Source: Octopus sinensis
Lineage: Eukaryota
Reading direction: 5' to 3'
Assembly: GCF_006345805.1 (NCBI RefSeq)
Contig: NC_043022.1
Location: 24,180,001-24,244,000 of the forward strand
DNA: 64,000 bases
The notes beneath the pieces were generated by a model, which worked only from the letters and a program-made list of their open reading frames with translations, was not told the origin of the DNA and searched no databases. Of the stretch, positions 4,797 to 56,892 are shown piece after piece (positions within the stretch are counted from its first letter, which is position 1; the number at the start of each line of letters is the position of its first letter). The translations under genes were made by a program, and so were the position numbers.

Positions 4797-5306
4797 AGAT
4801 TGGTAGGGTCTGGAAGAGTAGAGACATCAGACTCGCTACCAAATGCAGATTGGTGAATGCAATCGTCTTCCCAATAGCAACATATGAAATGCGAGGCCTG
4901 GACACTAAAGAAAGCTGACCAGAAGAGAACTAATGCATTCGAGCTTTGGTGTTGGAGAAGACTTTTACGGATTCCATGGACAGCGAGGCTCACCAATGGA
5001 AAAGTTCTTAAGCAGATCAGGCCAAAAATGTTGCTAGAAGCTAGGATCACCAAGCATAGATTGGCATATTTTGGTCATATTATGCAGAGAAAATCCCTGG
5101 AGAAGGACATCATGCTCGGAATGGTCAGTGGAAAGAGAGGAAGAGGCCGACCAAGAACCCGCTAGCTTGACACCATCAAGAGTGATACTGGAATGGACAT
5201 AGCCAATCTGAAAGAAGTGGCCCAGGATAGAACTGACTGGAGGACACTGATCCATCGAGTAACCGAGAGTCGACTTCGACTGAGCGGATAGATAGATAGA
5301 TAGATA
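4797..5306 (+). mobile_element. Decayed BovB-like RTE LINE 3' end with (GATA)n tail
   Basis: VWKSRDI..RLVNAIVFPIATY / CEAWTLKK..AFELWCWRRLLRIPWT..YFGHIMQR..RGRGRP, with a frameshift and a premature stop. Confidence 0.9.
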
Positions 5307-8033: not shown

Positions 8034-8243
8034 CCTTATAGCATTTGGATTACTCTGTCAAATGTAATGCTTGTTTATTCAGATCGTTTTCAATTAATCA
8101 GCTATTATCTTGTAGTTTTCGGGTTTTCATGATGCATTTCTTTATTTTTAGAAAGGCACTGTAGGGTAGGTGGGAGAGGCCTGATCTGGTCAGTTTGAAC
8201 ATATAACAGGTAGGCTATTTGGGCTGGTTTAAATGTTAAAAGG
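8034..8243. mobile_element. piggyBac-like MITE (type 2). Further copies at about 6845-7270, 7520-7724, 21678-21885, 34945-35130, 53790-54445 and 62340-62500
   Basis: TTAA|ccttatagcatt...aatgttaaaagg|TTAA, with a shared internal sequence (attactctgtcaaatgtaatgc..gaatgacattgtagggtagg). Confidence 0.7.
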
Positions 8244-9195
8244 TTAAAAGAAACATTTAACCGAGAATATATTAAATTAACTATGAGCAATAATAATAGG
8301 TTACTTGTTTTGGTCATTTGACGGCGGACATGCTGGAGCACTGCCCTGAAGGATTTTAGTCAAATAATTTGACTCCAGGACTTATTATTTTTAAGCCTAG
8401 TACTTATTTTATAGTGCTCTATTGCCGAACCGCTAGGTCACAGAGACTTAAACACACCAACACTGGTTGTCAAATGGTGATGGGAGAGGAGGACAAACAC
8501 AGACACACACACACAAAAATATACACACATACAAACATACATACATATATATATATATATACACGACAGGTTTCTTTCAGTTTCCATCTACCAAATCCAC
8601 TCACAAGGCTTTTGTAGAAGACAGTTGCTGAAGATGCCATGCAGTGGAACTGAACCCAGAACCAAGTTACTGGGAAGCAAGCTTCTTACCACACAGCCAC
8701 ACATGTGTCTATATATAATATATTGGGGTAATTATATATAATATACTGTTGTAACTCTGTGTAGTATACTGGAGTAATTATTACAATATACTAGGTTAAT
8801 TATGTGTAAATACATGGAGTTAACTATATACAATACACTAAACTGTATTCTATAAATCTGGTTAATCACGTATTATAGAGTAACTAGAAGCTAAATACTA
8901 AGTTAATTGCATGCTGTATATTTGGATAACTATGTAAACATGCTGAGCTAACTTCAAAAGGTGATGAGAGTAGCTTTGTTGAGTTTGTAGGGCTGTCACT
9001 TGCATTGATCTAGCTGATGTCTCATTTGGTGGACAATGACAGCTGTGGTTACAAGTTTCCTATAAGCCAGTCTCTGCTCCACTGCAGTTCTAGCAGTGAG
9101 TGTTTGTAACTCAGTGCAGAACAAATATCACAAGAGACTTCAAATAGCATTCTTTTTTCCTGTTTTTTTTCTTTACCCAACTTACATTAGAGAAA

Positions 9196-9586: not shown

Positions 9587-11282
9587 TTGCTTGTATATAA
9601 CTAAAGCGCAATAGCTGTAGATGAGCATCACCATCATCCTACAATTAGTGTTGTTTGCTTCCAATCTTTCACAGAAACATGTTGGGTCAGTTGGAAAAAA
9701 AAAAATCTTGCTTAGAAATAGGTGAAGGTTGGCAATCTGGCAATTGAAAATCTACCACTATGATCTCTATCAGACACACAAGCATAGCCAATTGGATATT
9801 AAAATGATGATGATGATGATGATGAGATACAATGGCCTTTCATGCAGTTTCTGTCAACCAAGTTCTATTCATAAGGCCTCAGTCAAATCAAAGTTACGGT
9901 AGCAGGCATTCACCCAAGATGGCTTGCAGGGGACTTGAACCCAAGACCATAGTGCTTGCCACTCGACCTTCTTAACGCTTGCAACTACTCTAGTGCTTGA
10001 GCTGCGGCTATTATCAAAACTACAAACAGCCAGCCTGTAAACCTCACTCATCTCTACTGAGGAGTTTCACAATATCTCCATTTACAGAGGATTTCAATTG
10101 GTTTGACCATCAACAAGTGTCATATTCCTGGATGGTTAGACAGGAAGGAACAAGACACTTGATGACAATCAGACAGTTAAACCAATTGAATAGAAATAAA
10201 CACTATAATGATAAGGCTAACAATCCGGATATTCATAAACTTAATAACTGACACTATTTCAATAGCACATTCTCCCACATTATGATTCGTGGCTGTGTGG
10301 TAAGAAGCTTACTTCCCAACCACATGGTTCTAGGTTCAGTTCCACTGCGTAGCACCTTGGGCAGGTGTCTTCTACTAAAGCCTTGGGCCAAACAAAGCCT
10401 TGTGAGTGGATTTGGTAGACGGAACCTAAAAGAAGCCCATCATATATATATATATATATATATAAATATATATATTTGAGACATTTTATTTATTATTTTG
10501 CACATTACTTAATCATTGTTATATGTTTTATATTATATTTAATAAGTAATTTTTCTAAATGGTATAATTTAATTTGAATTGATAAAAGGTGAGTTTTTTT
10601 CTAATATATATATATAATGGTAAAGCACTTGACAGGTAATCACAGAGATATGAGTTCAAAACTCATGGCTGGCCGCTGACAAATTTTGCTGGTGACATTT
10701 TAGGCACTTGTGTCAGTGACACATAAAAAGCCCCTGTGCCAGTGACATATAAAAAGCACTGTACCCATGAACATATAAAAGGGACACATGCTGGTGACAT
10801 GTCAGAGGCACTTGTGCCAGTGACACATAAAAGGCCCCCGTGCCGGTGATACATAAAAGACACCTGTGCCAGTGACATATAAAAAGCACTGTACCTATGA
10901 CATATAAAAGGGACACGTGCTGGTGACATGTAAAAGGTACTTGCGCGAGTGACACAAAAAAGACACTCAGGGCACACTGTAAAGTGGTTGGCATTAGAAA
11001 GGGCATCCAGCTGTAGAAAACCAAACCAAAACAGATGACTGGAGCCTTGTGCAGCTCTTCAGCTTACAGCTCCGTTCAGTTCAGTGAAAAGAAAAGAAAG
11101 AAAGAAAAGAAAAGATAGACTAAGTACCAGGTTAAAAATAAATCCTGGGGTCAATTCATTTGCCTAAAACCTTCAAGGCAGTGTAGGAGGGCTGCACTGC
11201 AGACAAGTAAAGAAATGAGAAATAAAAGATATATGAAGGGCTACTTTCAGTTTCTGTCTACCAAACCCACTCACAAGTACCT

Positions 11283-11512
11283 ATTTCTTTACTGCCCACA
11301 AGGGGCTACACACAGAGGGGACAAACAAGGACAGACAAAGGGATTAAGTCGATTACATCGACCCCAGTGCGTAACTGGTACTTATTTAATCGACCCCAAA
11401 AGGATGAAAGGCAAAGTCGACCTCGGAGGAATTTGAACTCGGAACGGAGCGGCAGACGAAATACTGCTAAGCATTTCGCCTGGCGTGCTAACGTTTCTAC
11501 CAGCTAGCCGCC
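11283..11512 (-). mobile_element. Family B tRNA-SINE (central gtcgactttgcctttcatcctttcggggtcgataaattaagtaccag; possibly a Meta-type domain)
   Basis: Head ggcggc..gctggtagaaacgttagcacgcc with B-box gagttcaaatt. Many copies, e.g. 26819-27023, 29110-29330, 56385-56530 and 58465-58635. Confidence 0.85.
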
Positions 11513-11823: not shown

Positions 11824-13427
11824 CTGCAAAAGACATCAAAACAATACATTATTATTTACAAGAGCACATTTCAAAAATAACAATAATAATAATAATAATA
11901 ATAATAATAATTAATTCTTTTATTGGCCTCAAGGACTGACAAAAATTAATTATCACATAAAGGGACAAAACAGGACGAAAGGTTACAAAGGGTTTTGTCC
12001 GTTTGTAAAAAACCGTGTAACAACGAAAAATTATAGCAACGAAAAACTCCCAATAGGGGGAGGCATTACGAAAGTTTCCTAATGGAAAAACCCATAAAAG
12101 CCACGGTAATAATAATAAGTAATTTCTGATTTAGACACAAAACCACCAATTTTGAGGGGAGGGGTTTTGTCAATATTACTGTCCCCACTAGTACATTATT
12201 TCATTGACCTCAGGGAGATGAAAGCAAAGTCGAACCAGGTGGGAATGGAACTCAGATTGTAAAGAACCAGAAGAAGCAACACAAGACACTTTTCTGATGC
12301 TCTGCCAATTCTGCCAGCTCACTGCCCTTGATAAAAACATAATGGATGCTAATTTAATTGAAGACCAGCAATTTCAATGGCAGAGTGGGTAGGGCTTTAA
12401 TGCCATTGGTACCAGTTCATGACTGGTATTTCGTTGGGAGAATGGAAGACAAAGATGGTATGTATATGTCCACACTATATTTAAACACACACAAACACAT
12501 TATGATTTCAGTGGAAGAACAATGAAAAATAAAACATTTGTTTTCTAAGCACCTATAAGACTACATTTCTAGAACCGCAAGTTTGATAGAGATGCAAATT
12601 TAGACATTTTTTTCAATCCCCATTGTATGTATCTGCTGAAAACTAGACAGAGACAGGAAAACAGACAGAATTTAATTTGATTGACAAACTGACTTGCCCA
12701 AAGAACTCTACTGTCCAACCATCCTCCACAGACACACACACACACAAACACACACACACATAGAGCCATAGAGCGAGTGTTTTAAGCTGTGACCTCGTTA
12801 GGGTTAAAAGTGCTGGCACCTCAACTGCACAGCGAGGCTGGCCTCTCGTGCTGTTTCTCAAACGAAATCCAATTTAATGAATAACAATGCGATAACGAGG
12901 TTATTAAAAATATCAACTGGCAACATGAAGCGTGCGATAGTTAATGCAAATTAAAACTGATCTGATCTAATATCCGAAAATCAATTTACTGCTTGAATTC
13001 AAACGCGATCAATAGAAGCAAGAGTTACAATTATCAGCTGTGTGCTTAATCAATAATGTATGATCATTCAAAACTACGCAGACGGAGGAGGTGGGGTTGG
13101 CAGTCGCACTGGCCGTGGTGGTGGTGGTGGTGGTGGTAGTGGTGGTGATGGCTGTTTGTGCTCTTATTATTGCCGCCACTGCTGTTTCTGTGACTACCAC
13201 CACCACCACCACCACAATCATCACCGCTGTTACTATTAGTTATAATGTTAGGAGTGGTATCATTGTGAACTGGTACTGTGATGTTTTTTTAATTCACCAT
13301 CATCATCATTATCATCAACATTGTAATCATCATCATCTGTATTATCGCCACTGTGCAGTTAGCTACATGTAACTGAGAAAGGCTTAAATGACTATATATA
13401 TAAATATATATATATGTGTGTGTGTGT

Positions 13428-20859: not shown

Positions 20860-22839
20860 AGCCATGTTTGCTTCCTTCATACTAAATTTTCTCACCTCAA
20901 CTACATTTCTCTCTGTTTGCTCATGTTTCTGTTTTGGTTCTTTGACCAAATTATCTTCATTTATCGATGGAATTACTTCAATTCAATTCTTACACTATCT
21001 CAAAGTTCTTGATTTTTTAAAAACTTTTTTTCTTTTCTTTTCTATTTTTCACTACACTGCATAAAACAGCTTTTCTCCAGAAATTCGTATTTGATAACAA
21101 ACATCGATTTAGATTTAAAAAAAGCAAAGTATAAAAGCTATAAAAACAAACATGAAAAAAATCTTGCTAAATTAACACAGCAATCATTAACCATTCCAGT
21201 AATCAAGTGGAAGACGTGTTTTGATTGGCTGTTGCTTTTCTCTACTAATTAAAACGGGCCTATATGTTATTTATCGTGCAGACATGAATTCATTATTATT
21301 ATTATCATCATCATCATCGTTATTATTAACTACACCCGCTTCCTCTCTTCTCTAAGTCCTACCTTTATGATATTGATAAATTCAATCAAGCAGTGACTCT
21401 ATCATTTGATTTAAGTTATATATAAACAGCACACTTAATATAATGATGGTGGTGGTGGTGATGATGATGATGATGATGATAGTGGTGGTGGCGGTGAAGA
21501 TGATCAACTGTCCTTCTTCTCGCAAATGATAGTAATTCTCATCAATTCTGAGCTTGAGGCCTACATTTACAGACAGTAGAGAAAGATGGGGAGGAAGAGG
21601 AGGAGAGAGAGAGAGAGAGAGAGAACTGAGAAGGTTGGGCAGTGATCCCATCCAAAATGTTCATGTCTACACTTTAACCCCTTAGCGTTCAGACCATTGT
21701 CAAAAGCAATGCTTATTTATCCACATTGCTTTTAAATAACCACACTTAATTTTGTAGCTTCAAGATTTCAATGAGGCGATTGTATATTTTTAGAATGGCA
21801 TTGTAGGATTAGCTTGAGAGGCTGGATCTGGCTGCTTTGAACGGAAAGCAGGTAGAGTATTTGCACCAGAAATGGCCAGTTTAAACTAGCCTGTATGATG
21901 ACAAGAAATATACTACCACTACTACCTCCCTCACCCCTGACTCTTAGGGTAACCCTGAGGTAACTATGACTTGGCTGTAACACAGGTTATCCAATGTTCA
22001 CATCAACACTGAGCTCCTACATGGTCACTGGACTTGCAAGCAATAACAGACAAATCTCTCTCAAATCACAGTCTTCCAATTCGTATAAAGACAAATTAAA
22101 TAATGTAGCCATAGGTACAGGCATGGCTGCATGGTAAGAAGTTTGCTACCCAACCACATGGTTCCTGGATCAGTTCCATTGCATGGCACCTTAGGCAAGT
22201 GTCTTCTTCTATAGCCTCAAGCTGACCAAAGCCATGTGAGTGGATTTGGTAGATGGAAACTGAAAGAAGTCTGTCATGTGTATATATGTGTATCTTTGTA
22301 TCTGTATTTGTCCTCCACCACTTAACCGTGTTGATGTGTTTATGTCCCTCTAACTTAGCGGTTCGACAATAGAGACCAACAGAATAGTACCAGGTTTAAA
22401 AAAAAAACAGTACTGAAGTCAATTCATTGAACTAAAAATTCTTCAAGCTGTTGCTCCAGCATGGCCACAGTCTAATGACTGAAACAAGTAAAAGATATAA
22501 GATGAAAAGATACATAAACATCTTATATAAGGGATGGTCATGACTGGGATGCCTTTGATAAAAGGTCCACTCTGACCTGAGACAACAGCAACTATCATAA
22601 CTTCCAAAATGGTTTCAGATTTAAGAAGAAGGCCAGCAATTTTGAGAAGCCGGGGTTGATACTGCGGACCACAGTCCTTGATTGGCATTTTATTTTATCA
22701 AGCCAGACGTATTAAAGGTAGACATCAGAAGAATTTGAACTCAAAACACAGAGTTGGCTGCCATAAGTGAAAGCAATATCCACCACAATTTATATATGTC
22801 CAGAAAATTGGGGATGTGAGGGAGCATTGTGATTTCATT

Positions 22840-26271: not shown

Positions 26272-27359
26272 ATATATAGATAGATAATTGTGAAGGTACA
26301 TAGCCTAGTAGTTAGGCTGTTGTACTCACAATTGGTAGATTGTGGGTTCGATTCCCTGACTGGGCAGCACATTCTGTTCTTGAACAAAACACTTTCTTTC
26401 ACACTCCTTTCCATCAGGGGGGGGGGGAGTATGTTGGCCTGCTCTCCTAGCCAGTGGAGTGGCATCATTTAAAGGCTAGAACAATGCAAAAAAGTGCATT
26501 GTGACTAGTGATGTGTAATAATATCTGTTAGCCTGGTCATGTGATATATATATATATATATCTGGCACTCTGTTGGTTACAACAATGAGTGTTCCAGTTG
26601 ATCTGATCAACAAAACAGCCTACTTGTAAAATTTCATGTGCAAGTGGCTGAGCACACCTCAGACAGGCATAGCCTTTAGTTGTTCTCAGGGAGACTCAGC
26701 ATGACAGAGAATGGGGCAAGGCTGACCCTTTAAATTGCAAGTGGAAAAAAGTGGATGTTATGATGATGATGATGATGATGATGATGTGTATGTGTGTCTG
26801 TGTATATGTATATATATATTTCTTTACTGTCCACAAGGGGCTAAACATAGAGGGGACAAACAAGGACAGACAAAGGGATTAAGTCGATTACATCGACCCC
26901 AGTGCGAAACTGGTATTTTATTTATCGACCCCGAAAGGATGAAAGGCAAAGTTAACCTCAGCGGAATTTGAACTCAGAACGTAACGACAGACGAAATACC
27001 ACTAAGCATCTCGCCCGGCACGCTATATATGTATATATATATGTATGTATATATATGTAGACACACAAACCCAAACTCAAGTAAAAACAGAACAGGTCTC
27101 GACTGGCTGCCAACAACCATACTGTTACATACACACAGGTATACATGCATATACATGTACAGTTTATCACACACACAAATGCAGAGACAGAAAGCAATAA
27201 AATTTTCCTCTTGATGTGGAAGCAGAGAATATACGAAATGTTGTAACCTTTGTTGAAATGAATAAAACATTAATCTTCAGATCAACTACAACCAATACTG
27301 CTTCACCACCACCACCACCACTGCTACCACCACTGTGGTGATAAGAGAGGAGCAGGAAG

Positions 27360-35489: not shown

Positions 35490-37015
35490 TTAAGTCCACT
35501 CAGCTGGCAAAAATGAGTATTCCTGCGACAGACTGGCATTCTGTCCAACAAGGAGTATATATGCCAGAGAATCTGGGAAACCGGCCCTACGAGTCCATAG
35601 GACTAAAGAAGGAGCTTTATCCAGTTTTTTTTATTCAATATAACATTTCCTTTTTGTGATTCATAAGAGTGGCTTCTTTTTCTAGTAGGTCGAATAATCT
35701 CATAAGATAGGTCGCTGATAGAGGAGACTGACATACAGAGAAAACTAAAATTAGAAACAAATAAATGATGGCTACTGGGGTCCAAACTGAATTTGAAGAA
35801 AATAAAGGCGAAAATGTTGGTAGGATAAACAGTTTTGTAGCAAAGTGAAGAATACAATAGAAAGGAAATATAAGAATGAAAATAGTAAAAAAATAAAAAG
35901 TAAATAAATGAAATTTAAAAAATCCACAATGTGACAGATGAGTTTTTCAGTGATGGGAGATACTGTTGTTTAATGCTACGAATTGACTCACAAGTCATTG
36001 CAGGTCTCACTAGTTATTAAGAAGTTAGCTGTGTGTAATTAAATACAAGTTTCGAAGACTACAGCAGTAGAGACTGACGCGCTGACAGAGAGAGACAAGC
36101 ATCCAGGAAAGACTGCTGTGTATTTCCTAAAGCAATTATAGCTGCGTATGTACATACAGCTGGTCAAGTTGATAGAGTTAGTGACCTTCTGATTATAAGG
36201 TTAATGGTTCATGCCGCATTGTTGGGGGTGCACTTAAAATCTCATTGCCTCAGTTTGCTTAGCTTTAAATAAGTACAATTAGAAGGCAGAGTTCATTGTT
36301 GTGAATAGGGGAGTGGTAACTTAACCAATGTGCAAAACTCAGTTCAGATTCAAAGATAGCTTAAGAGTGGCACACTTATGATGTTACAAATAGACAGGAT
36401 GTATCAGATGGGGACAACTAGCGATCAGCATGTGTGTGTATACATACATACATGCATATAATACATACATATATATCTCATTTACTCATTTCAGTCATTT
36501 GACTGTGGCCATGCTGGAGCACCACATTTAGTCGAGGAAATCGACCCCCCCCCACCCAGGACTTATTCTTTGTAAGCCTAGTACTTATTCTATCGGTCTC
36601 TTTTGCTGAACCGCTAAGTTACGGGAACGGGGGGTGGGGTGGGACAAACACAACACACACATATACGACGGGCTTCTTTCAGTTTCCGTCTACCAAATCC
36701 ACTCACAAGGCTTTGGTCGGCCCGAGGCTATAGTGGAAGACACTTGCCCAAGGCGCCACGCAGTGGGACTGAACCCGGAACCATGTGGTTCGTAAGCAAG
36801 CTACTTACCACACAGCCACTCCTACGCCTATATATATATATACATACACATACAATACATACATATATAATATGTGTATGTGTGTATATATATATATATA
36901 TAACGTGTGTATGTTTAACTGCAAAAAGCAGTCTATATATAATACATCAGTTAAATTTAAGGAGAACCAGAAGGTGATTCACTCCATAATGTGTGTTTGT
37001 ATATACATGTATATA

Positions 37016-38055
37016 CAGTACTCAGCCCCCTCCTATTTATCATAGTCCTCCAGGCAATAACGGAGGAATTCAAGACAGGATGCCCTTGGGAGCTCCTCTA
37101 TGCTGATGACCTTGCTCTAATTGCTGAGTCGCTATCAGAACTGGAGGAGAAGTTTCAGGTGTGGAAACAAGGATTAGAATCGAAGGGCCTCAGAGTCAAT
37201 CTAGCTAAAACCAAAGTCGTAATCAGTAGGAAGGTAGACAAATCACAAACACCTTCAGGTAGATGGCCCTGCTCGATCTGTAGAAAAGGTGTAGGTAGAA
37301 ACTCTATAAGATGCACCAAGTGTAAGCTACGGGCACATAAGAGATGCAGCAATGTCAAAGGAAGGCTAACTAGGAAGATGGTTTTTGTATGTGGCAGATG
37401 CTCAGGAACAATAAACACTGAAAATGCTCTGAGACCAACTTCCGTCACTTTCCAGGGAGAAAAACTAGAAATAGTTGATAGTTTCCGTTACCTAGGGGAC
37501 CAAGTCAGCAGCGGGGCCGGGTGTGCTGAAAGTGTAACTGCTAGAGTAAGAATAGCTTGGGCAAAGTTCAGAGAGCTCTTACCTCTGCTGGTGACAAAAG
37601 GCCTCTCGCACAGAGTGAAAGGCAGACTGTATGATGCGTGTGTACGAACAGCCATGCTACATGGCAGTGAAACATGGGCCGTGACTGCTGAGGATATGCG
37701 TAAGCTCGCTAGAAATGAAGCCAGTATGCTCCGATGGATGTGTAATGCCAGTACTCACACTCGGCAGTGTGTAAGTACCTTGAGAGAAAAGCTGGACCTA
37801 AGAAGCATCAGTTGTGGTGTGCAAGAGAGACGTTTGCGCTGGTATGGTCATGTGGCGAGAATGGATGAAGATAGTTGTGTGAAAAAGTGCTACACCCTAG
37901 CGGTTGAGGGAACCTGTGGAAGAGGCAGACCCAGGAAAACCTGGGACGAGGTGGTGAAGCACGACCTTCGAACTTTAGGTCTCACTGAGGAAATGACTAG
38001 AGACCGAGACCTCTGGAAGTGTGCTGTGCGCGAGAAGACCCGGCAGGACAAGTGA
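37016..38055 (+). pseudogene. Truncated reverse transcriptase ORF with an embedded C4HC3 (PHD-type) finger at 37270-37401
   Basis: Translation from the ORF track: CSIC..CTKC..HKRC..CGRC lies between the YADD region and FRYLG. Confidence 0.88.
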
Positions 38056-42762: not shown

Positions 42763-42991
42763 GGCGAGCTGGCAGAAACGTTAGCATGCCAGGCAAAATG
42801 TGTAGCCGTATTTCGCCTGCCGTTACGTTCTGAGTTCAAATTCCGCTGAGGTCGACTTTGCCTTTCATCCTTTCGAGGTCAATAAATTAAGTACCAATTA
42901 TGCACTGGGGTCAATGTAATCGACCTAATCTCTTTGTCTGTCCTTGTTTGTCCCATCTATGTTTAGCCCCTTGTGGGCGATAAAGAAATAA
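42763..42991 (+). mobile_element. Family B SINE, followed by a partial second copy to about 43125
   Basis: Same motifs as the 11283 copy. Confidence 0.85.
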
Positions 42992-43665
42992 GAAACTGAA
43001 AGAAGCCCATTGTCGATAAATTAAGTACCAGTTGCTTACCAGGGTCGATGTAATCGACTTAATCCATTTGTCTGTCCTTGTTTGTCCCCTCTGTGTTTAG
43101 CCCCTTGTGGGTAGTAAAGAAAGAGGTCTGACAAGAGCTGGCAAGGCCAGAAGCTGCATCAGGTTCCAGTCTGATTTGGCTTGCTTTCTACAGCTTGATA
43201 TCCTTCCAAGCACCAACCACTTTACAGAGAGTACAGGGTACTTTTTTTACATGGCACTAGCACCAGTGCCTTTTATGCAGCACAAGCACCAGAGATCTGG
43301 TTGTTATTTTTAGCAGATTGAGTGACTAGAGAACTCTCTCTCATTAGACTGTGTGTCGTTCACACAGAAAGCCAAGTGGAACATCACCTCACACCACTAA
43401 TCTCTAATGTAACAGCCAAGACCAGTGCTGGTGTGAAACGCCTTTTACTGGTTTTAGTCATTTGATTGCGGCCATGCTGGGGAATTGCTTTGAAGAATTT
43501 TTAATTAAATGAATCAACTACAGTACTTTTATTTCTAAAGTCTGGTACTTATTTCAATGGTTTCTTTTGCTGGACCACTAAGTTATGAGGATGTAAACAC
43601 AGACAAAAAGACAGACACACATAGTCACACACATATATATATACAATGGGCTTCTTTCAGTTTCT

Positions 43666-44080
43666 TATTTCTTTATTGCCCAAAAGGGGCTAAACATAGA
43701 GGGGGCAAAAAAGGACAGACAAAGAGATTAGGTCAATTACATTGACCCCAGTGCGTAACTGGAACTTAATTTATCGACCCCGAAAGGATGAAAGGCAAAG
43801 TCGACCTCAGCGGAATTTGAACTCAGAACATAATGGCAGACAAAATACCTTTTTCTTTACTACCCACAAGGGGCTAAACACAGAGGGGACAAACAAGGAC
43901 AGACCAACGGATTAAGTCGATTACATCGACCCCAGTGCGTAACTGGTACTTAATTTATCAACCCCGAAAGGATGAAAGGCAAAGTCGACCTCAGTGGAAT
44001 TTGAACTCAGAATGTAACGGCAGACGAAATACGGCTATACATTTTGCCCGGCGTGCTAACGTTCCTGGCAGCTCGCCACC
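43666..44080 (-). mobile_element. Two tandem family B SINE copies
   Basis: Repeated gtcgacctcag..gaatttgaactcagaa blocks. Confidence 0.85.
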
Positions 44081-45771: not shown

Positions 45772-46949
45772 AGGGTGCAGTGGATAAACTGTTGTCTAAA
45801 TTACATGAAAAGGAAAATAACACTGACATTTCATTTAAACAGATATATTTACCAAAATTACATAAAATTATTTTGAAATACTAAAGAGTAAATCTATTCA
45901 ATGAAATCACCATTTGCTTCAACGACTGTCTCCAGACGACTTTGGAATCTCCTGCAACTCTTCTGGATGGCTTCCTTGTTTAAGTTGGTGAATGCTGCCA
46001 TAATCCTTGCCTTCAGTTCATCTTTGGTGTTACAAAGAGTTTTGTTGGTCTCTCACTCAACTGTGCCCCACACATAATAATCAAAAGGGTTTCAGTTTGG
46101 GGAGTTAGGTGGCCAGGTGTTAGGGGTGATGTGGTCGCAGAAATTGTCTGATAGACATGACTGGGTTCTCCTGCTTGTGTGGCATGGTGCAGAGTCCTGT
46201 TGTCGAACATAGGGTCTTCAAGTAACTACCTTCTTGACCCAGGGCAGTACTACCTCCTCCAGGAACTTGATGTAGGCCTCCATGTTGAGTCTGCGTCCAT
46301 GTGGGAAGATGATTGGAGGCACAGCATCACCATCACTAGTGATCACTCCAAACATTATGATGTTGACTGGATGTTTGATTTTTATCACTTTCGGTACATG
46401 TCCTCAGATTGACACCCAAACACTTGTACTGGAGCTTCCAGCATGAATGCCAAGCAGTACAGCATGTCGTTTCCAAATTTCTGACAAAGTGAATTGCATC
46501 ATGGTGCTGTTTTTCTCACAGATGATGCCCAACTGACCCTACTATACTGTGTAGTTGACAAAATCAAGAACAAACAATACGCATGCACAAAATTCAGTGT
46601 TGGTGGCACGTAAGAGAACCATCCGAATGTGACCATAGCCAGCACCGCATCGACTGGCCTCCGTGCCGGTGGCACGTAACAAACACCATATGAGCATGGC
46701 CGTTTGCCAGCCTCACCTGGCACCTGTGCCGGTGGCACGTAAACAGCACCCACTACACTCATGGAGTGGTTGGCATTAGGAAGGGCATCCAGCTGTAGAA
46801 ACGCTGCCAGATCTGACTGGCCTGGTGCAGCCTTCAGGCTTCCCAGACCCCAGTTGAACCGTCCAACCCATGCTAGCATGGAAAGCGGACGTTAAACGGT
46901 GATGATGATGATGATGATAAAATGGTGACAATTTACCCATTACACCCTG
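45771..46949 (-). mobile_element. Internally deleted Tc1/mariner transposon of the maT (DD37D) type, with a nested RTE-tail copy
   Basis: TA-flanked TIRs cagggtg...caccctg. Minus-strand remnant 45894-46407 reads QQDSAPCH..WPPNSP.NPFDYYVW, with 37 residues between the last two Asp; it contains stops. Confidence 0.85.
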
Positions 46950-49615: not shown

Positions 49616-49981
49616 ACTAGCACTATGACCTGGAAATGCTGGGTCATAGTGCTAGTGCATGCATATACAGCTGCGTGCGTGTGCACATACACGTGAGTAC
49701 TGTCCAAATCGCCGACCAATCACATACAGCTAGCTGGCATTCAATTAGCGTATCAAGTTTTGGGCATTTTGATTGGGTTTTGGATAGAAAATTCACAAAA
49801 AAGTCACTTCTACTGATTTTTTAATGGCTTTGCGGGGTGACTGGGGAAATGTAAAGATGTGCACGACCACCCTTGGACGGTTTTGAATGACCATAGAAAG
49901 TGCGAGTCCTCTAACTGAAAAATTGTGGATTTGTATAAAGGACACACACACAGACATTTTGCCGTGTATATATATAGAGAT
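49616..49981 (+). mobile_element. Probable non-autonomous Helentron/DINE-1-like element
   Basis: Starts actagc, has a (CA)n near the 3' end, and finishes gccgtgtatatatatagagat, the end structure typical of HINE-type elements. Confidence 0.45.
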
Positions 49982-53731: not shown

Positions 53732-53944
53732 GGACACAGAAAAAACAAGGAGAGAAAAAAAAAATCTGTAGTGGCTAATGATCTCTCATGGCATTCAGAT
53801 TGCTCTGTCAAATATATTGCTTATTTATTCCCATTGTTTAGAATTAATCATGCATTATCCCATAGCTTTGAGATTTTGAGGACTTGGCTTGGCTTCATGC
53901 TCTTGCTTGGTGGGGTTGGGGTAATCCCAGGTTAATGGTCTCAG

Positions 53945-54100
53945 AGATATCATCATGCATAGAGCTGACCAGGTCCACTAGTGCTCTCCATCAATGGCAG
54001 TCCTGTGCCAGCCCCTCTGCGTCTTCCAAAATAACATCAAGCTCCTGGAGATCTTCCAGAATCATGTCCAACTATCTGGTGCGGGGCCAGTCACAAGGAC
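53945..54100 (+). mobile_element. Degenerate CR1-like RT fragment
   Basis: NNIKLLEIFQ..LVRG resembles the CR1 motif DIxxLExVQRRATKLVPG. Confidence 0.4.
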
Positions 54101-54149
54101 TCTTCCAACCCCCAACTGCTGTGTCGATGATTTTGTTGATGCAATTGTT

Positions 54150-54330
54150 TATTCAACTCAATTCAATTCAATTTTTATTGGCTCAAAAAGCAAAAGCAAG
54201 GCCATATAGGGGGACAGGGAGTTATGTACAGGGAGGGTGGTCATACAAAGAGTTCAGGCCATTTCTGGTCAAGAGAGACTTTGAACCGAGCGGTTGTTGG
54301 CATCTTCACTATCTCGTCTGGCAGCTTATT
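54150..54330 (-). mobile_element. CR1/L2-type LINE 3' end
   Basis: Minus strand NKLPDEIVKMPTTARFKVSLDQKW resembles the CR1 C-terminal WNxLP..FKxxLD motif. Followed by an AATAAA and (ATTGA)n tail. Confidence 0.7.
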
Positions 54331-56252
54331 TTTAGAATGACATTGTAGGGTAGGTTTGAGGGGCCAGATCTGGTTGTTTTGAACACAAAACAAGCAGAAT
54401 GTCTTGGGCTCAATATACGGCCAGTTTAAATGTTAAAGGGGTTCAGACATCTATGGAAGGGGTTTAGCTGAAAGTAGGAAAGAGATGAAAGAGGAGGGAG
54501 AAGGGAGAGAGTATGGTGTGAGAGAGAGAGAGAAGAAGAGAGAAGAAAGTGGATATATGTAGAAAGACTGTATACAATGGAAGTAATTAGCGTTAACAAA
54601 GACAAATGAGAAGCATTTGCTAGCAAGGGTTTCCTTTCTTCTTTACATTAATTAAAGAAGAGGAGGTGGGTGAGTTTCTTTACTTCTTTATATTAATTAG
54701 TGAGGAAGAGGAGGAAGTCTCCTTTCTTCTTTCTATTAATTAGTAAGACAGAAGAAAAGGAGAGAATAGTACTTGTGACCTCTATAGTAGCCTTATAGGT
54801 CAATGTGGGTGGCAATGGGGTTGGGTTTGAATTTCAGTGGCCTGCATTGTGGTGGGGAGGAAGGGCTGGGTTTGGGTGAGAATTAGACATCATAAGGATG
54901 ATGAGAGGATGCACAGGATGGTCAAGGAGAGAGAGGGAGAGGGGAGGGGTTGGTAGGCATCTTGCTAGTTCAGAAGAGCAGAGGCTGCTCTAGTAATGAC
55001 AGAAGAGGCAAAGAGAAGACTACAACAGGTCAGTTGTCCAGCAGTTATAATGTGTCCAAGAGTGAGTCTTTTGCCAATCAATTACTCTTTTACTCTTTTA
55101 CTTGTTTCAGTCATTTGACTGTGGCCATGCTGGAGCACCGCCTTTTTTGAATGACTTTTTTTTTTTTAAGTGATCCAGAACAGTGATTCTTACACTGACC
55201 AAAACCAAGCACCACCTACCACCAAAGTAAATAAAATCAAATAAATATGGCAATGGTGTGGTAAGAAGTTTATTTCCCAACCACATGAAACTTTAAGCTG
55301 TGTATTGTTTGGTATAAGACAAAATCACTTCTTTTGCAAAGTCAATGCAGTATAAAACCAAATCCTATGCACGGTCGGTGTGACGTAAAAGTTTCATGAA
55401 GAAGGTAAGTGTAAGACAAGACAAGACCGGTTCCTTTGGAAGGTCAGTGTAATACAAGACCGTTTCCTCTGAGACATGTGGCAGTGACAAAATAAAGATG
55501 CTAATATTTAATAGCCAGCTGTATGCGTTTCTTGCAAATAACCATAAATCAACAGCTAAAGAGGCAAGTAGATTACATTGAGTAGTTGATGGTGGTTTAA
55601 TATCTAAGGTCAGCAGCTGGTATATATAGGAGAGAGAGAGACAGAGAGAGAAAGTGTGTGTGTGGAGATACATGTATCTGAATGTGTGTATAATGTTTAT
55701 CTTTATTTTCTGCTACATGCTTCAGTCACTGAACTGTGGCCATGCTGGAGCACTGCCTTGAAAGATTTCAGTCAAACACATCGACCCCAATACTTATTTT
55801 TTTCTTTAAAGTCTGAGATCTATCAGTCAGATATATATATATATATATATATATAATAGGTGAAACTACATGCATTTTCGACCTCGTGCTGATATCTGGC
55901 GTGTAGTTCTACAAATTATATCTTGCAAAGAGGATCACACTGAAGATCTACAGATAAGTTGTGTAAGTAAAATTACGTAATTTATTGATAGTGAAACAAT
56001 TGTTTGTGATTAATCTATATTTTTGTTATTTTTCATTTGTCTTGCTCGCTTACGTTTTCTGGTGCTAACTTTTCTGGAGACCAATCCTTAGTGGTTGGGA
56101 CCTATGCGGAACTCTTTCTAGCGTAAGGGCTTCCACATATTTGTTCTCTCTTATATTTATGTGTGTATATATATATACTTTTATTCTTTAACATGTTTCA
56201 GCGCTAAGGCTGTACACACACACACACACACTATTTTGTAAAGTCAGGCTCT

Positions 56253-56354
56253 TGCTACTCTGAGTTTTACTTGTGGGTGCATCAGAATCTTCAGTCAAGT
56301 TATGACTATATGCCTGAAGATTCTGTGCACACACAGGTAAAATTCAGAGCGGCA
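56253..56354 (+). ncRNA. Pre-miRNA-like long hairpin
   Basis: Arms 56258-56294 and 56314-56349 pair almost fully, and the stem extends to 56253/56354. Loop 19 nt. Confidence 0.5.
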
Positions 56355-56892
56355 CAGGTCTAACTCCACCCAAATAAAGTATATTTATTTCTTTACTACT
56401 CACAAGGGGCTAAACACAGAGGGGACAAACAAGGACAGACAAAGGGATTAAGTCGATTACATCGACCCCAGTGCGTAACTGGTACTTAATTTATCGACCC
56501 CAAAAGGATGACAGGCAAAGTCGACCTCCACGAAAGTATATTATTTATCTCTTTTTGATACTGAGATCCTTTTTTTTTTTTTCCCCTGACAGTCTGCATT
56601 AAACAGATACAAGTATTCCCATACACATACCTATATTGAAAAACAAGAGTCAGGCAGGCAGAGTTTGGCTCCAGAAAAACAGCTGAGGTTAAGTAAGCAG
56701 CTTGTAGCAAAATACCTCTTTTCCCACATCGCTTGTGATTCTCTCCCTAAAAATTGTTGACATTATAATGAAAGACTGGTGAGAAATTCTAGTAATTTGG
56801 TAATGTTATGCATAACACCTCATTACAACTACCTTCACAAGCCCACCCCACTTACAGAGAAATGGTTAGGTAGGTAGGCAGTAAGAATTATA

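What the first reader, a model, noticed from the sequence alone, without database searches (positions are those of the whole stretch)
56253..56354. Single-copy ~100-nt hairpin with pri-miRNA-like geometry
Seen: ctctgagttttacttgtgggtgcatcagaatcttcag (56258-56294) pairs with ctgaagattctgtgcacacacaggtaaaattcagag (56314-56349). There is one mismatch, one bulge and two G-U pairs, and the stem extends four more pairs at its base. The 19-nt loop holds a mini-stem, agtca/tgact. No other copy, TIR family or TSD is visible in the window. Knowledge: animal pri-miRNA stems are about 35 bp, and coleoid cephalopods have a large expansion of lineage-specific miRNAs. Inference: this is a candidate novel miRNA. 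G-U pairs favour the plus strand, antisense to the host gene. I do not recognise the mature sequence.
Basis: partly seen in the sequence, partly recalled or inferred. Interest (0 to 1): 0.75.

Follow-up and report, generated by a model that had tools for sequence, protein, structure and literature searches.

The report
Orphan 120-nt hairpin in octopus DNA
A real, very stable hairpin-forming inverted repeat of about 120 bases lies in repeat-rich non-coding octopus DNA; its shape would suit a microRNA precursor, but nothing available here shows that it is one, and it is more likely an ordinary local palindrome.

Summary
Bases 56243-56364 fold into one long hairpin on either strand (+ strand -65.3 kcal/mol, z = -10; - strand -56.7, z = -9.2). 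It is the most stable complex-sequence 110-mer of 12,778 in the window, and it has no second copy there.

The microRNA reading could not be tested. No Rfam family matches. The arms and 12 candidate seed matches are absent from the octopus microRNA paper's held tables and from full-text literature. I could not reach an orthologous locus, small-RNA reads or a whole cephalopod genome. No exon was found, so "antisense to a host gene" is unsupported. The strand call rests on two G-U pairs against one.

The helix continues to about 47 bp, beyond the ~35 bp optimum. Only 164 microRNA genes are annotated in the roughly 2.8-Gb, 66%-repeat Octopus vulgaris genome.

My best reading is an orphan imperfect palindrome from a local inverted duplication or a foldback/MITE relic, with no dedicated function (about 0.5). 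A young small-RNA locus remains possible (about 0.17). Interest is low to moderate.

The parts
56243..56364 (.). Whole imperfect palindrome / hairpin: 44 bp in five helical segments plus a 19-nt loop
   Evidence: RNAfold on both strands and as DNA. It persists in a 311-nt context.
56258..56294 (+). 5' arm of the core helix (37 nt, including bulged U 56282 and mismatched G 56276)
56295..56313 (+). Terminal loop of 19 nt, with a weak internal mini-stem
   Evidence: It contains no UGU or GUG motif (read from the sequence).
56314..56349 (+). 3' arm of the core helix (36 nt)
56246..56256 (+). 5' side of the basal extension: 5 bp, a 2-nt internal loop, then 4 bp. It pairs with 56351-56361.
   Evidence: The outer inverted repeat is only about 64% complementary (and hand alignment).
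56351..56361 (+). 3' side of the basal extension
56273..56294 (+). Hypothetical 5p product (GUGGGUGCAUCAGAAUCUUCAG), if Drosha cuts 22 bp from the apical junction
   Evidence: Inference from the structure and the published 22-bp/13-bp ruler. No read evidence.
56316..56336 (+). Hypothetical 3p product (GAAGAUUCUGUGCACACACAG) with a 2-nt 3' overhang
   Evidence: Inference only. No read evidence.
56215..56232 (.). (CA)n microsatellite directly upstream. More TA/TG simple repeat lies at about 56150-56180.
56380..56528 (.). 149-bp SINE-like dispersed repeat directly downstream. It is not part of the hairpin.
   Evidence: At least 7 copies in the window at 85-96% identity, all starting at 56380-56388 and ending near 56528.

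Best explanation
The feature is an orphan, imperfect palindrome of about 120 bp in repeat-rich, apparently non-coding DNA of an Octopus-like genome.

Most likely origin (inferred): a local inverted duplication by fold-back or template-switch synthesis, next to microsatellites that are prone to slippage. A solitary relic of a foldback or MITE-like element is the other likely origin. It has since picked up a few substitutions and one indel.

Function: it has no dedicated function as a gene. If the region is transcribed, for example within an intron, the RNA will form a 44-47-bp near-perfect helix. Such a helix is an incidental substrate for double-strand-RNA enzymes (ADAR editing, possibly Dicer or Drosha).

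What is shown: the palindrome, its extreme stability, its uniqueness within the 64-kb window, and its repeat context.
What is inferred: how it arose and that it is neutral.
For: - A stem this good cannot arise by chance. z is about -10, 0 of 200 shuffles are as stable, and it is the top complex-sequence hairpin of 12,778 windows. It therefore came from duplication or selection.
- It folds almost equally well on both strands and as DNA, as expected of a DNA-level inverted repeat.
- The arms differ by about 4 of 37 positions in the core. That resembles the 4-15% divergence among neighbouring SINE-like copies, so it is compatible with neutral decay.
- The two G-U pairs on + against one on - are what random transitions would give.
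- The helix does not stop at 35 bp. It fades out to about 47 bp.
- It lies between a (CA)n tract and a SINE-like insertion in a window made mostly of repeats. About 31% of the window is covered by intra-window repeats and about 14% by low-complexity sequence. The window also holds RT, RTE-like and mariner-like remnants.
- A second, unrelated complex palindrome exists at 49616-49656, so such local palindromes recur in this DNA.
- No known RNA family matches.
- No match was found to published octopus miRNA material that I could reach.
- Base rate: 164 miRNA genes in O. vulgaris (PMC9699675), in a genome that is 66% repeats and includes TIR elements and MITEs (PMC13282606).
Against: - The core geometry is what a canonical pri-miRNA needs: a helix of about 35 bp, a 19-nt loop, and one mismatch plus one bulge in the upper 22 bp.
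- The inner 36 bp are clearly better paired (about 90%) than the outer 22 (about 64%). Selection on the mature duplex would also produce that pattern.
- One Drosha register (cut at 56274|56275 and 56334|56335) places a basal UG at -14 and a CNNC at +16 at the same time.
- Coleoids have gained many lineage-specific miRNAs, 35 families restricted to Octopus.
- Neutrality and the duplication mechanism are inferred, not shown. No parent copy and no target-site duplication were seen.
Confidence: 0.5

Rival explanations
1. It is a young, Octopus-lineage-specific microRNA or other Dicer-dependent small-RNA locus. The hairpin would be transcribed, probably within a longer Pol II transcript. Drosha would cut it about 22 bp below the loop and Dicer near the loop. 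The products would be roughly a 5p GUGGGUGCAUCAGAAUCUUCAG and a 3p GAAGAUUCUGUGCACACACAG.
For: - Core helix of 35 bp, a 19-nt loop, and a predicted pre-miRNA of about 64 nt.
- The would-be duplex has one mismatch and one bulge, and more than 16 paired bases.
- The hairpin dominates the local fold in a 311-nt context.
- The inner helix is better preserved than the outer helix.
- It is single-copy in the window, with no TSD.
- The coleoid miRNA expansion is documented, and the published set is stated to be an underestimate (PMC9699675).
Against: - No expression or conservation evidence could be obtained.
- No Rfam hit reaches threshold. The best is a plant family, MIR7807, at 42 bits against a gathering score of 90, which is a generic long-hairpin match.
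- The arms and 12 candidate seed-match 8-mers are absent from the paper's held tables. Those tables are truncated and hold no precursor sequences.
- The helix extends well past 35 bp, so the basal junction is ill-defined.
- There is no apical UGU or GUG. The UG and CNNC motifs fit only a register that disagrees with the 22-bp/13-bp ruler.
- The prior is about 1 miRNA gene per 17 Mb of genome.
Confidence: 0.17
2. It is one member of a dispersed palindromic MITE or foldback family. The two arms are the terminal inverted repeats of a non-autonomous DNA transposon that has many copies elsewhere in the genome.
For: - The architecture, long inverted arms around a short spacer, matches palindromic MITEs.
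- The window carries mariner-like transposase remnants (45897-46403, identified by eye).
- TIR elements and MITE families are annotated in O. vulgaris (PMC13282606).
Against: - No second copy exists in the 64-kb window or in the one 21-kb O. vulgaris locus I could fetch.
- No TA, TTAA or other direct duplication flanks any plausible boundary (read).
- No similarity was found to any other sequence in the window.
- The sample, 85 kb of a ~2.8-Gb genome, would miss any family with fewer than tens of thousands of copies. The test is therefore weak.
Confidence: 0.22
3. It is a functional double-stranded RNA element within a host pre-mRNA, for example an ADAR-recruiting or ADAR-editing hairpin, or a structure that affects splicing. 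It would not be a small-RNA gene.
For: - A helix of 44-47 bp is a good ADAR substrate.
- In octopus most A-to-I editing lies in introns and 3'UTRs, where hairpins are enriched (PMC9699675).
Against: - No host gene or exon was found in the window.
- There is no evidence of transcription.
- Any long inverted repeat in a transcript is edited incidentally, so editing would not by itself imply function.
Confidence: 0.06

Closest known systems
Canonical metazoan pri-miRNA hairpins, including the 90 novel families of Octopus curated in MirGeneDB (of which 35 are restricted to Octopus) (Zolotarov et al. 2022, PMC9699675)
   Same: A single hairpin with a core helix of about 35 bp, a 19-nt loop, few imperfections in the upper 22 bp, and a location in non-coding DNA of an octopus-like genome.
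   Different: - No read evidence, no ortholog, and no family match.
- The helix runs on to about 47 bp instead of ending in single-stranded flanks.
- It is more stable (-65 kcal/mol for 122 nt) than typical animal precursors.
- The processing motifs are not coherently placed.
TE-derived palindromic hairpins that yield low-level small RNAs, such as the human MADE1 MITE / mir-548 family (from my own knowledge, not tested here)
   Same: A near-perfect inverted repeat of about 80-120 nt whose two arms form a microRNA-sized stem.
   Different: Those elements are multi-copy and have TA target-site duplications. Here no second copy and no TSD were found, though only 85 kb could be searched.
Hairpin RNA (hpRNA) endo-siRNA loci of Drosophila (from my own knowledge)
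   Same: A highly complementary inverted repeat that Dicer could process.
   Different: hpRNA stems are hundreds of base pairs long and give phased siRNAs. This stem, at 44-47 bp, could give at most two duplexes.
Short genomic palindromes made by fold-back or template-switch replication errors
   Same: - It is isolated and folds on both strands.
- It lies next to microsatellites.
- Arm divergence resembles that of nearby neutral repeats.
- A second, unrelated small palindrome lies in the same window (49616-49656).
   Different: The mechanism leaves no specific signature that I could test. The better preservation of the inner helix is not predicted by simple neutral decay.

Membership tests
Canonical animal microRNA gene (MirGeneDB / Fromm et al. 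criteria) | A hairpin in which the two ~22-nt arms share at least 16 paired bases | tested here: met
   In the upper 22 positions below the loop, 20 positions are paired, with one mismatch and one bulge.
Canonical animal microRNA gene (MirGeneDB / Fromm et al. criteria) | Reads from both arms, 20-26 nt long, with 2-nt 3' overhangs (the Drosha and Dicer signature) and homogeneous 5' ends | not testable with these tools
   No small-RNA data are accessible.
Canonical animal microRNA gene (MirGeneDB / Fromm et al. criteria) | Presence of the hairpin in a second species (the criterion used for octopus novel families, PMC9699675) | not testable with these tools
   The orthologous locus could not be reached. 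No exon handle was found, exact ORF look-ups failed, and only one unrelated O. vulgaris locus was obtained.
Canonical animal microRNA gene (MirGeneDB / Fromm et al. criteria) | Stem of 35 +/- 1 bp bounded by single-stranded basal segments | tested here: inconclusive
   The core is 35 bp. Pairing then continues (4 + 5 + 3 bp across small internal loops) to about 47 bp.
Canonical animal microRNA gene (MirGeneDB / Fromm et al. criteria) | Processing motifs: basal UG, apical UGU/GUG, and a downstream CNNC | tested here: inconclusive
   There is no UGU or GUG in the loop. UG (56261-62) and CNNC (56350-53) fit one register (cut at 56274|75), but that register lies 20 bp rather than 22 bp from the loop (read).
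Any described RNA family (Rfam 15) | Score at or above the family's gathering threshold | tested here: not met
   There were 0 hits in the whole window. The best local hit was MIR7807 at 42.4 bits against 90.
Published octopus miRNA set | Arm sequence or seed match identical to an annotated Ovu/Obi miRNA | tested here: inconclusive
   No occurrence was found in the held supplements. Those files hold only truncated 8-mer tables and no precursor sequences.
MITE (miniature inverted-repeat transposable element) | Target-site duplication flanking the terminal inverted repeats | tested here: not met
   No direct repeat lies at any plausible boundary (56237/56370, 56243/56364 or 56258/56349), read.
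MITE (miniature inverted-repeat transposable element) | Many dispersed copies in the genome | tested here: inconclusive
   No copy was found in the window, in 21 kb of O. vulgaris, or in metagenome contigs. The sampled genome fraction is about 0.003%.
Mirtron | Hairpin ends coincide with functional 5' GU and 3' AG splice sites between exons | tested here: not met
   GT at 56243 and AG at 56356-57 exist. However, the donor (GTCAGG) is poor, there is no polypyrimidine tract, and no flanking exons were found.
hpRNA / endo-siRNA hairpin | Inverted-repeat stem of hundreds of bp that yields phased siRNAs | tested here: not met
   The stem is 44-47 bp. Phasing is not testable.

The most novel reading that the evidence does not exclude
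The hairpin is a newly born, Octopus-lineage-specific microRNA caught early. It would be a local inverted duplication, roughly 15-25 million years old if the arm divergence is neutral. It would already have the right geometry for Drosha and Dicer, and its inner 35 bp would be under purifying selection. That would give a concrete example of how the unusually large coleoid microRNA expansion draws on genomic palindromes.
Probability: 0.1. Interest if true: 0.45.

Novelty: new member of a known kind. Interest (0 to 1): 0.2.

Why it matters
If it proved to be a processed and conserved small-RNA locus, it would add one family to the largest known invertebrate microRNA expansion. It would also show a birth mechanism, a local inverted duplication beside microsatellites, which the authors of the octopus study say is unknown. 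If it is only a palindrome, as I think more likely, it matters mainly as a caution. In a genome that is two-thirds repeats, hairpin geometry alone, even at z = -10, does not identify a microRNA gene.

Tried and rejected
- **Rfam.** A scan of the whole window at gathering thresholds and a permissive local scan gave only generic plant-MIR long-hairpin matches far below threshold.
- **Other copies.** I searched the window with up to 3 mismatches and with word-7 BLASTN, and found only the self inverted repeat and microsatellite noise.
- **Protein database as a proxy for cephalopod DNA.** A six-frame translation of the hairpin and its unique flanks gave no hits. Exact look-ups of five window ORFs also found nothing. 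I conclude the database lacks such short ORFs, so this is not evidence of single-copy status.
- **Host-gene search.** I masked repeats by self-BLAST, ranked stop-to-stop ORFs by amino-acid composition, and searched 81 ORFs (4,955 aa) with no hit. About half of the unique ORFs were never searched, so exons are not excluded.
- **RT ORF search.** It identified the genome as Octopus-like and gave one O. vulgaris locus, L001. Repeat families there are 84-96% identical to the window, but there is no hairpin copy. The hit list offered no further octopus loci.
- **Literature.** The Zolotarov et al. supplements contain no precursor sequences. The arms and 12 candidate seed-match 8-mers are absent. A full-text search for arm 12-13-mers returned only unrelated primer sequences. 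The 2026 O. vulgaris repeat paper has no repeat library held.
- **Metagenome scan.** The 12+12 apical palindrome returned 25 loci, all unrelated. Most are a GC-rich bacterial palindrome that shares the 12-mer by coincidence.
- **Mirtron, Helitron 3' hairpin, Pol III read-through from the neighbouring SINE.** I considered and rejected these on sequence grounds: poor splice sites, an AT-rich 44-bp stem, and a T4 run inside the arms.
- **Strand assignment from G-U pairs.** Rejected: 2 against 1.

Full report
**The observation**

RNAfold of 56243-56364 on the + strand gives a single hairpin at -65.3 kcal/mol. Dinucleotide shuffles average -29.2 +/- 3.6 (z = -9.98, 0 of 200 as stable).

- The core helix pairs 56258-56294 with 56314-56349 in runs of 18, 5 and 12 bp.
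- It has one G x A mismatch (56276 x 56331), one bulged U (56282), and two G-U pairs (56264-56343 and 56271-56336).
- Beyond an A x C mismatch it continues for 4 bp. Beyond a 2x2 internal loop it continues for 5 bp more.
- In a 311-nt context three further pairs are added, and the hairpin is what survives in the centroid structure.
- The loop is 19 nt.
- The - strand folds nearly as well (-56.7 kcal/mol, z = -9.2), and so does single-stranded DNA (z = -8.8).

**Is it more than chance?**

Yes. Of 12,778 overlapping 110-nt windows on the + strand (mean -19.9, sd 8.6 kcal/mol) this one ranks second. The only stronger one is a (GGT)n...(ACC)n microsatellite palindrome at 13111-13220. All other strong folders are TA, TG or CA simple repeats.

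Only two complex-sequence perfect stems of 12 bp or more with loops up to 30 nt exist in the window. They are this one and an unrelated one at 49616-49656. Ten Markov resamples gave 0 or 1. A helix of this quality therefore reflects either a duplication event or selection.

**Context**

The window has 40% G+C and is dominated by repeats. Intra-window dispersed repeats cover 31% and low-complexity sequence covers 14%. It holds:

- a reverse-transcriptase ORF at 36961-38052;
- an RTE-like LINE tail at 4878-5288;
- mariner-like transposase fragments at 45897-46403.

The RT ORF's best named relative is a hypothetical protein of Octopus vulgaris (82% identity). The chromosome locus that encodes it (GCA_951406725.2, OX597814.1, locus L001) shares the window's repeat families at 84-96% nucleotide identity.

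The hairpin sits in a 190-bp stretch that is unique within the window. A (CA)n tract (56215-56232) lies upstream. A 149-bp SINE-like repeat (56380-56528) lies downstream, with at least seven copies in the window, all with the same boundaries. The hairpin is not part of that repeat.

**Tests of the microRNA reading**

- No Rfam family reaches its gathering score anywhere in the window.
- A permissive local scan gives only generic matches to long plant-miRNA hairpins. The best is MIR7807 at 42 bits against a threshold of 90.
- The octopus microRNA study (PMC9699675) reports 164 miRNA genes in 138 families in O. vulgaris. Of these, 90 families are novel and 35 are restricted to Octopus. The authors required presence in a second species.
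- Its held supplementary files contain no precursor sequences.
- Neither arm occurs in those files.
- None of 12 seed-match 8-mers, covering all plausible 5p and 3p registers, occurs in its truncated target tables.
- A full-text search of the paper library for 12-13-mers of the arms found only unrelated primers.

These are weak negatives.

**Geometry**

Measuring 22 bp down from the loop puts a Drosha cut at about 56272|56273. This predicts a 5p of 56273-56294 and a 3p of 56316-56336, with a lower stem of about 14 bp below the cut. That agrees with the 35-bp model.

However, the helix does not end there, so single-stranded basal flanks are not evident. The loop has no UGU or GUG. A basal UG (56261-62) and a CNNC (56350-53) are jointly compatible only with a cut two bases higher, which disagrees with the ruler. 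I score the geometry as partly met.

The strand call is not supported. The + strand has two G-U pairs that become A-C on the - strand. The - strand gains one G-U from the + strand's A x C mismatch. Two against one carries no information.

**Tests of copy number and conservation**

These were the decisive questions, and the tools could not answer them.

- No eukaryotic genome collection is searchable by DNA. I therefore tried to reach cephalopod assemblies through proteins.
- A six-frame translation of the hairpin and its unique flanks found nothing.
- Five exact ORF look-ups found nothing.
- A composite of the 81 most protein-like ORFs from unique sequence on both strands (4,955 aa) found nothing.

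I found no host-gene exon, and the claim "antisense to the host gene" stands unverified. About half of the unique ORFs were not searched, so exons are not excluded.

The only octopus DNA obtained, 21 kb, has no copy of the hairpin. A scan of metagenome contigs for the apical 12+12 palindrome gave 25 loci, all unrelated.

No target-site duplication flanks any plausible boundary. "Single copy" is therefore shown for only 85 kb. A MITE family of thousands of copies would have escaped detection.

**What it most likely is**

- The arms differ at about 4 of 37 core positions. That is similar to the divergence among neighbouring SINE-like copies.
- The element folds on both strands. It lies beside microsatellites, and a second small palindrome occurs 6.6 kb away.
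- The O. vulgaris genome is 66% repeats and includes TIR elements and MITEs (PMC13282606). It has about one annotated miRNA gene per 17 Mb (the ~2.8-Gb genome size behind this figure is my own knowledge, not a tool result).

On these grounds the best-supported reading is an orphan imperfect palindrome made by a local inverted duplication or left by a foldback/MITE-like element, without a dedicated function (about 0.5). If transcribed, it would be an incidental double-strand-RNA substrate.

One observation does not fit simple neutral decay. The inner 36 bp are about 90% paired and the outer 22 only about 64%. Either the duplication was only about 41-44 bp long and the outer matches are fortuitous, or the inner helix is constrained. 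This keeps a young small-RNA locus alive as a rival (about 0.17). Membership of a dispersed MITE family is the other main rival (about 0.22).

**Novelty and interest**

Nothing here lies outside known kinds of sequence feature. At most it would be a new lineage-specific member of the microRNA class. Interest is low to moderate, and a single BLAST plus read mapping would settle the matter.

Noticed in passing
window 49616-49656: A second, unrelated complex-sequence palindrome: a 15-bp perfect stem (ACTAGCACTATGACC / GGTCATAGTGCTAGT) around an 11-nt loop, extended to 18 bp by RNAfold. Apart from the finding, it is the only complex perfect stem of 12 bp or more in the window.
   Followed up: partly
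window 13111-13220: A (GGT)n tract facing an (ACC)n tract forms the most stable 110-nt fold in the window (-66.5 kcal/mol). It is a microsatellite palindrome.
   Followed up: partly
window 36961-38052 (+): A 364-aa open reading frame of a non-LTR retrotransposon reverse transcriptase; its database relatives carry RVT_1 plus PHD. It is 82% identical to an O. vulgaris 'hypothetical predicted protein' and 90% identical in DNA to L001:10401-11391. This was the handle that identified the genome as Octopus-like.
   Followed up: yes
window 56380-56528 and copies at 11282-11424, 26811-26959, 42848-42991, 43012-43122, 43665-43808, 43852-43992: A 149-bp SINE-like dispersed repeat with sharply defined ends, 90-96% identical among most copies. 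One copy directly abuts the hairpin's 3' flank.
   Followed up: partly
window 45897-46403 (-) and 4878-5288 (+): Fragments that look like a Tc1/mariner transposase C-terminus and an RTE-type LINE tail. They were recognised by eye from the translations and not tested against a family library.
   Followed up: no
L003, L006-L016, L018-L027 (metagenome contigs), e.g. L008:3134-3189: A conserved palindrome of about 56 nt, TCGACAGAATCTTCAGAATCGACGCGGCTCCGGGTCGATTCTGAAGATTCTGTCGA, recurs in many G+C-rich, apparently bacterial contigs with differing flanks. It shares the hairpin's apical 12-mer by coincidence. Its nature is unknown.
   Followed up: no
L002 (ENA metagenome contig ERZ23499376 scaffold_13390), 445-1392: A metagenome contig carries a reverse-transcriptase gene 75% identical in DNA (68% in protein) to the window's retrotransposon. 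This suggests mollusc or cephalopod DNA in that sample.
   Followed up: no
window 53872-54345 (+): All three + frames are open for 200-470 nt here. The 3' part overlaps a repeat on the opposite strand (translation motif ...LQCHSKNK...), and similar motifs occur in ORFs at 8108-8359 and 21768-21983. It is probably a TE fragment rather than an exon. The composite homology search of these ORFs found nothing.
   Followed up: partly
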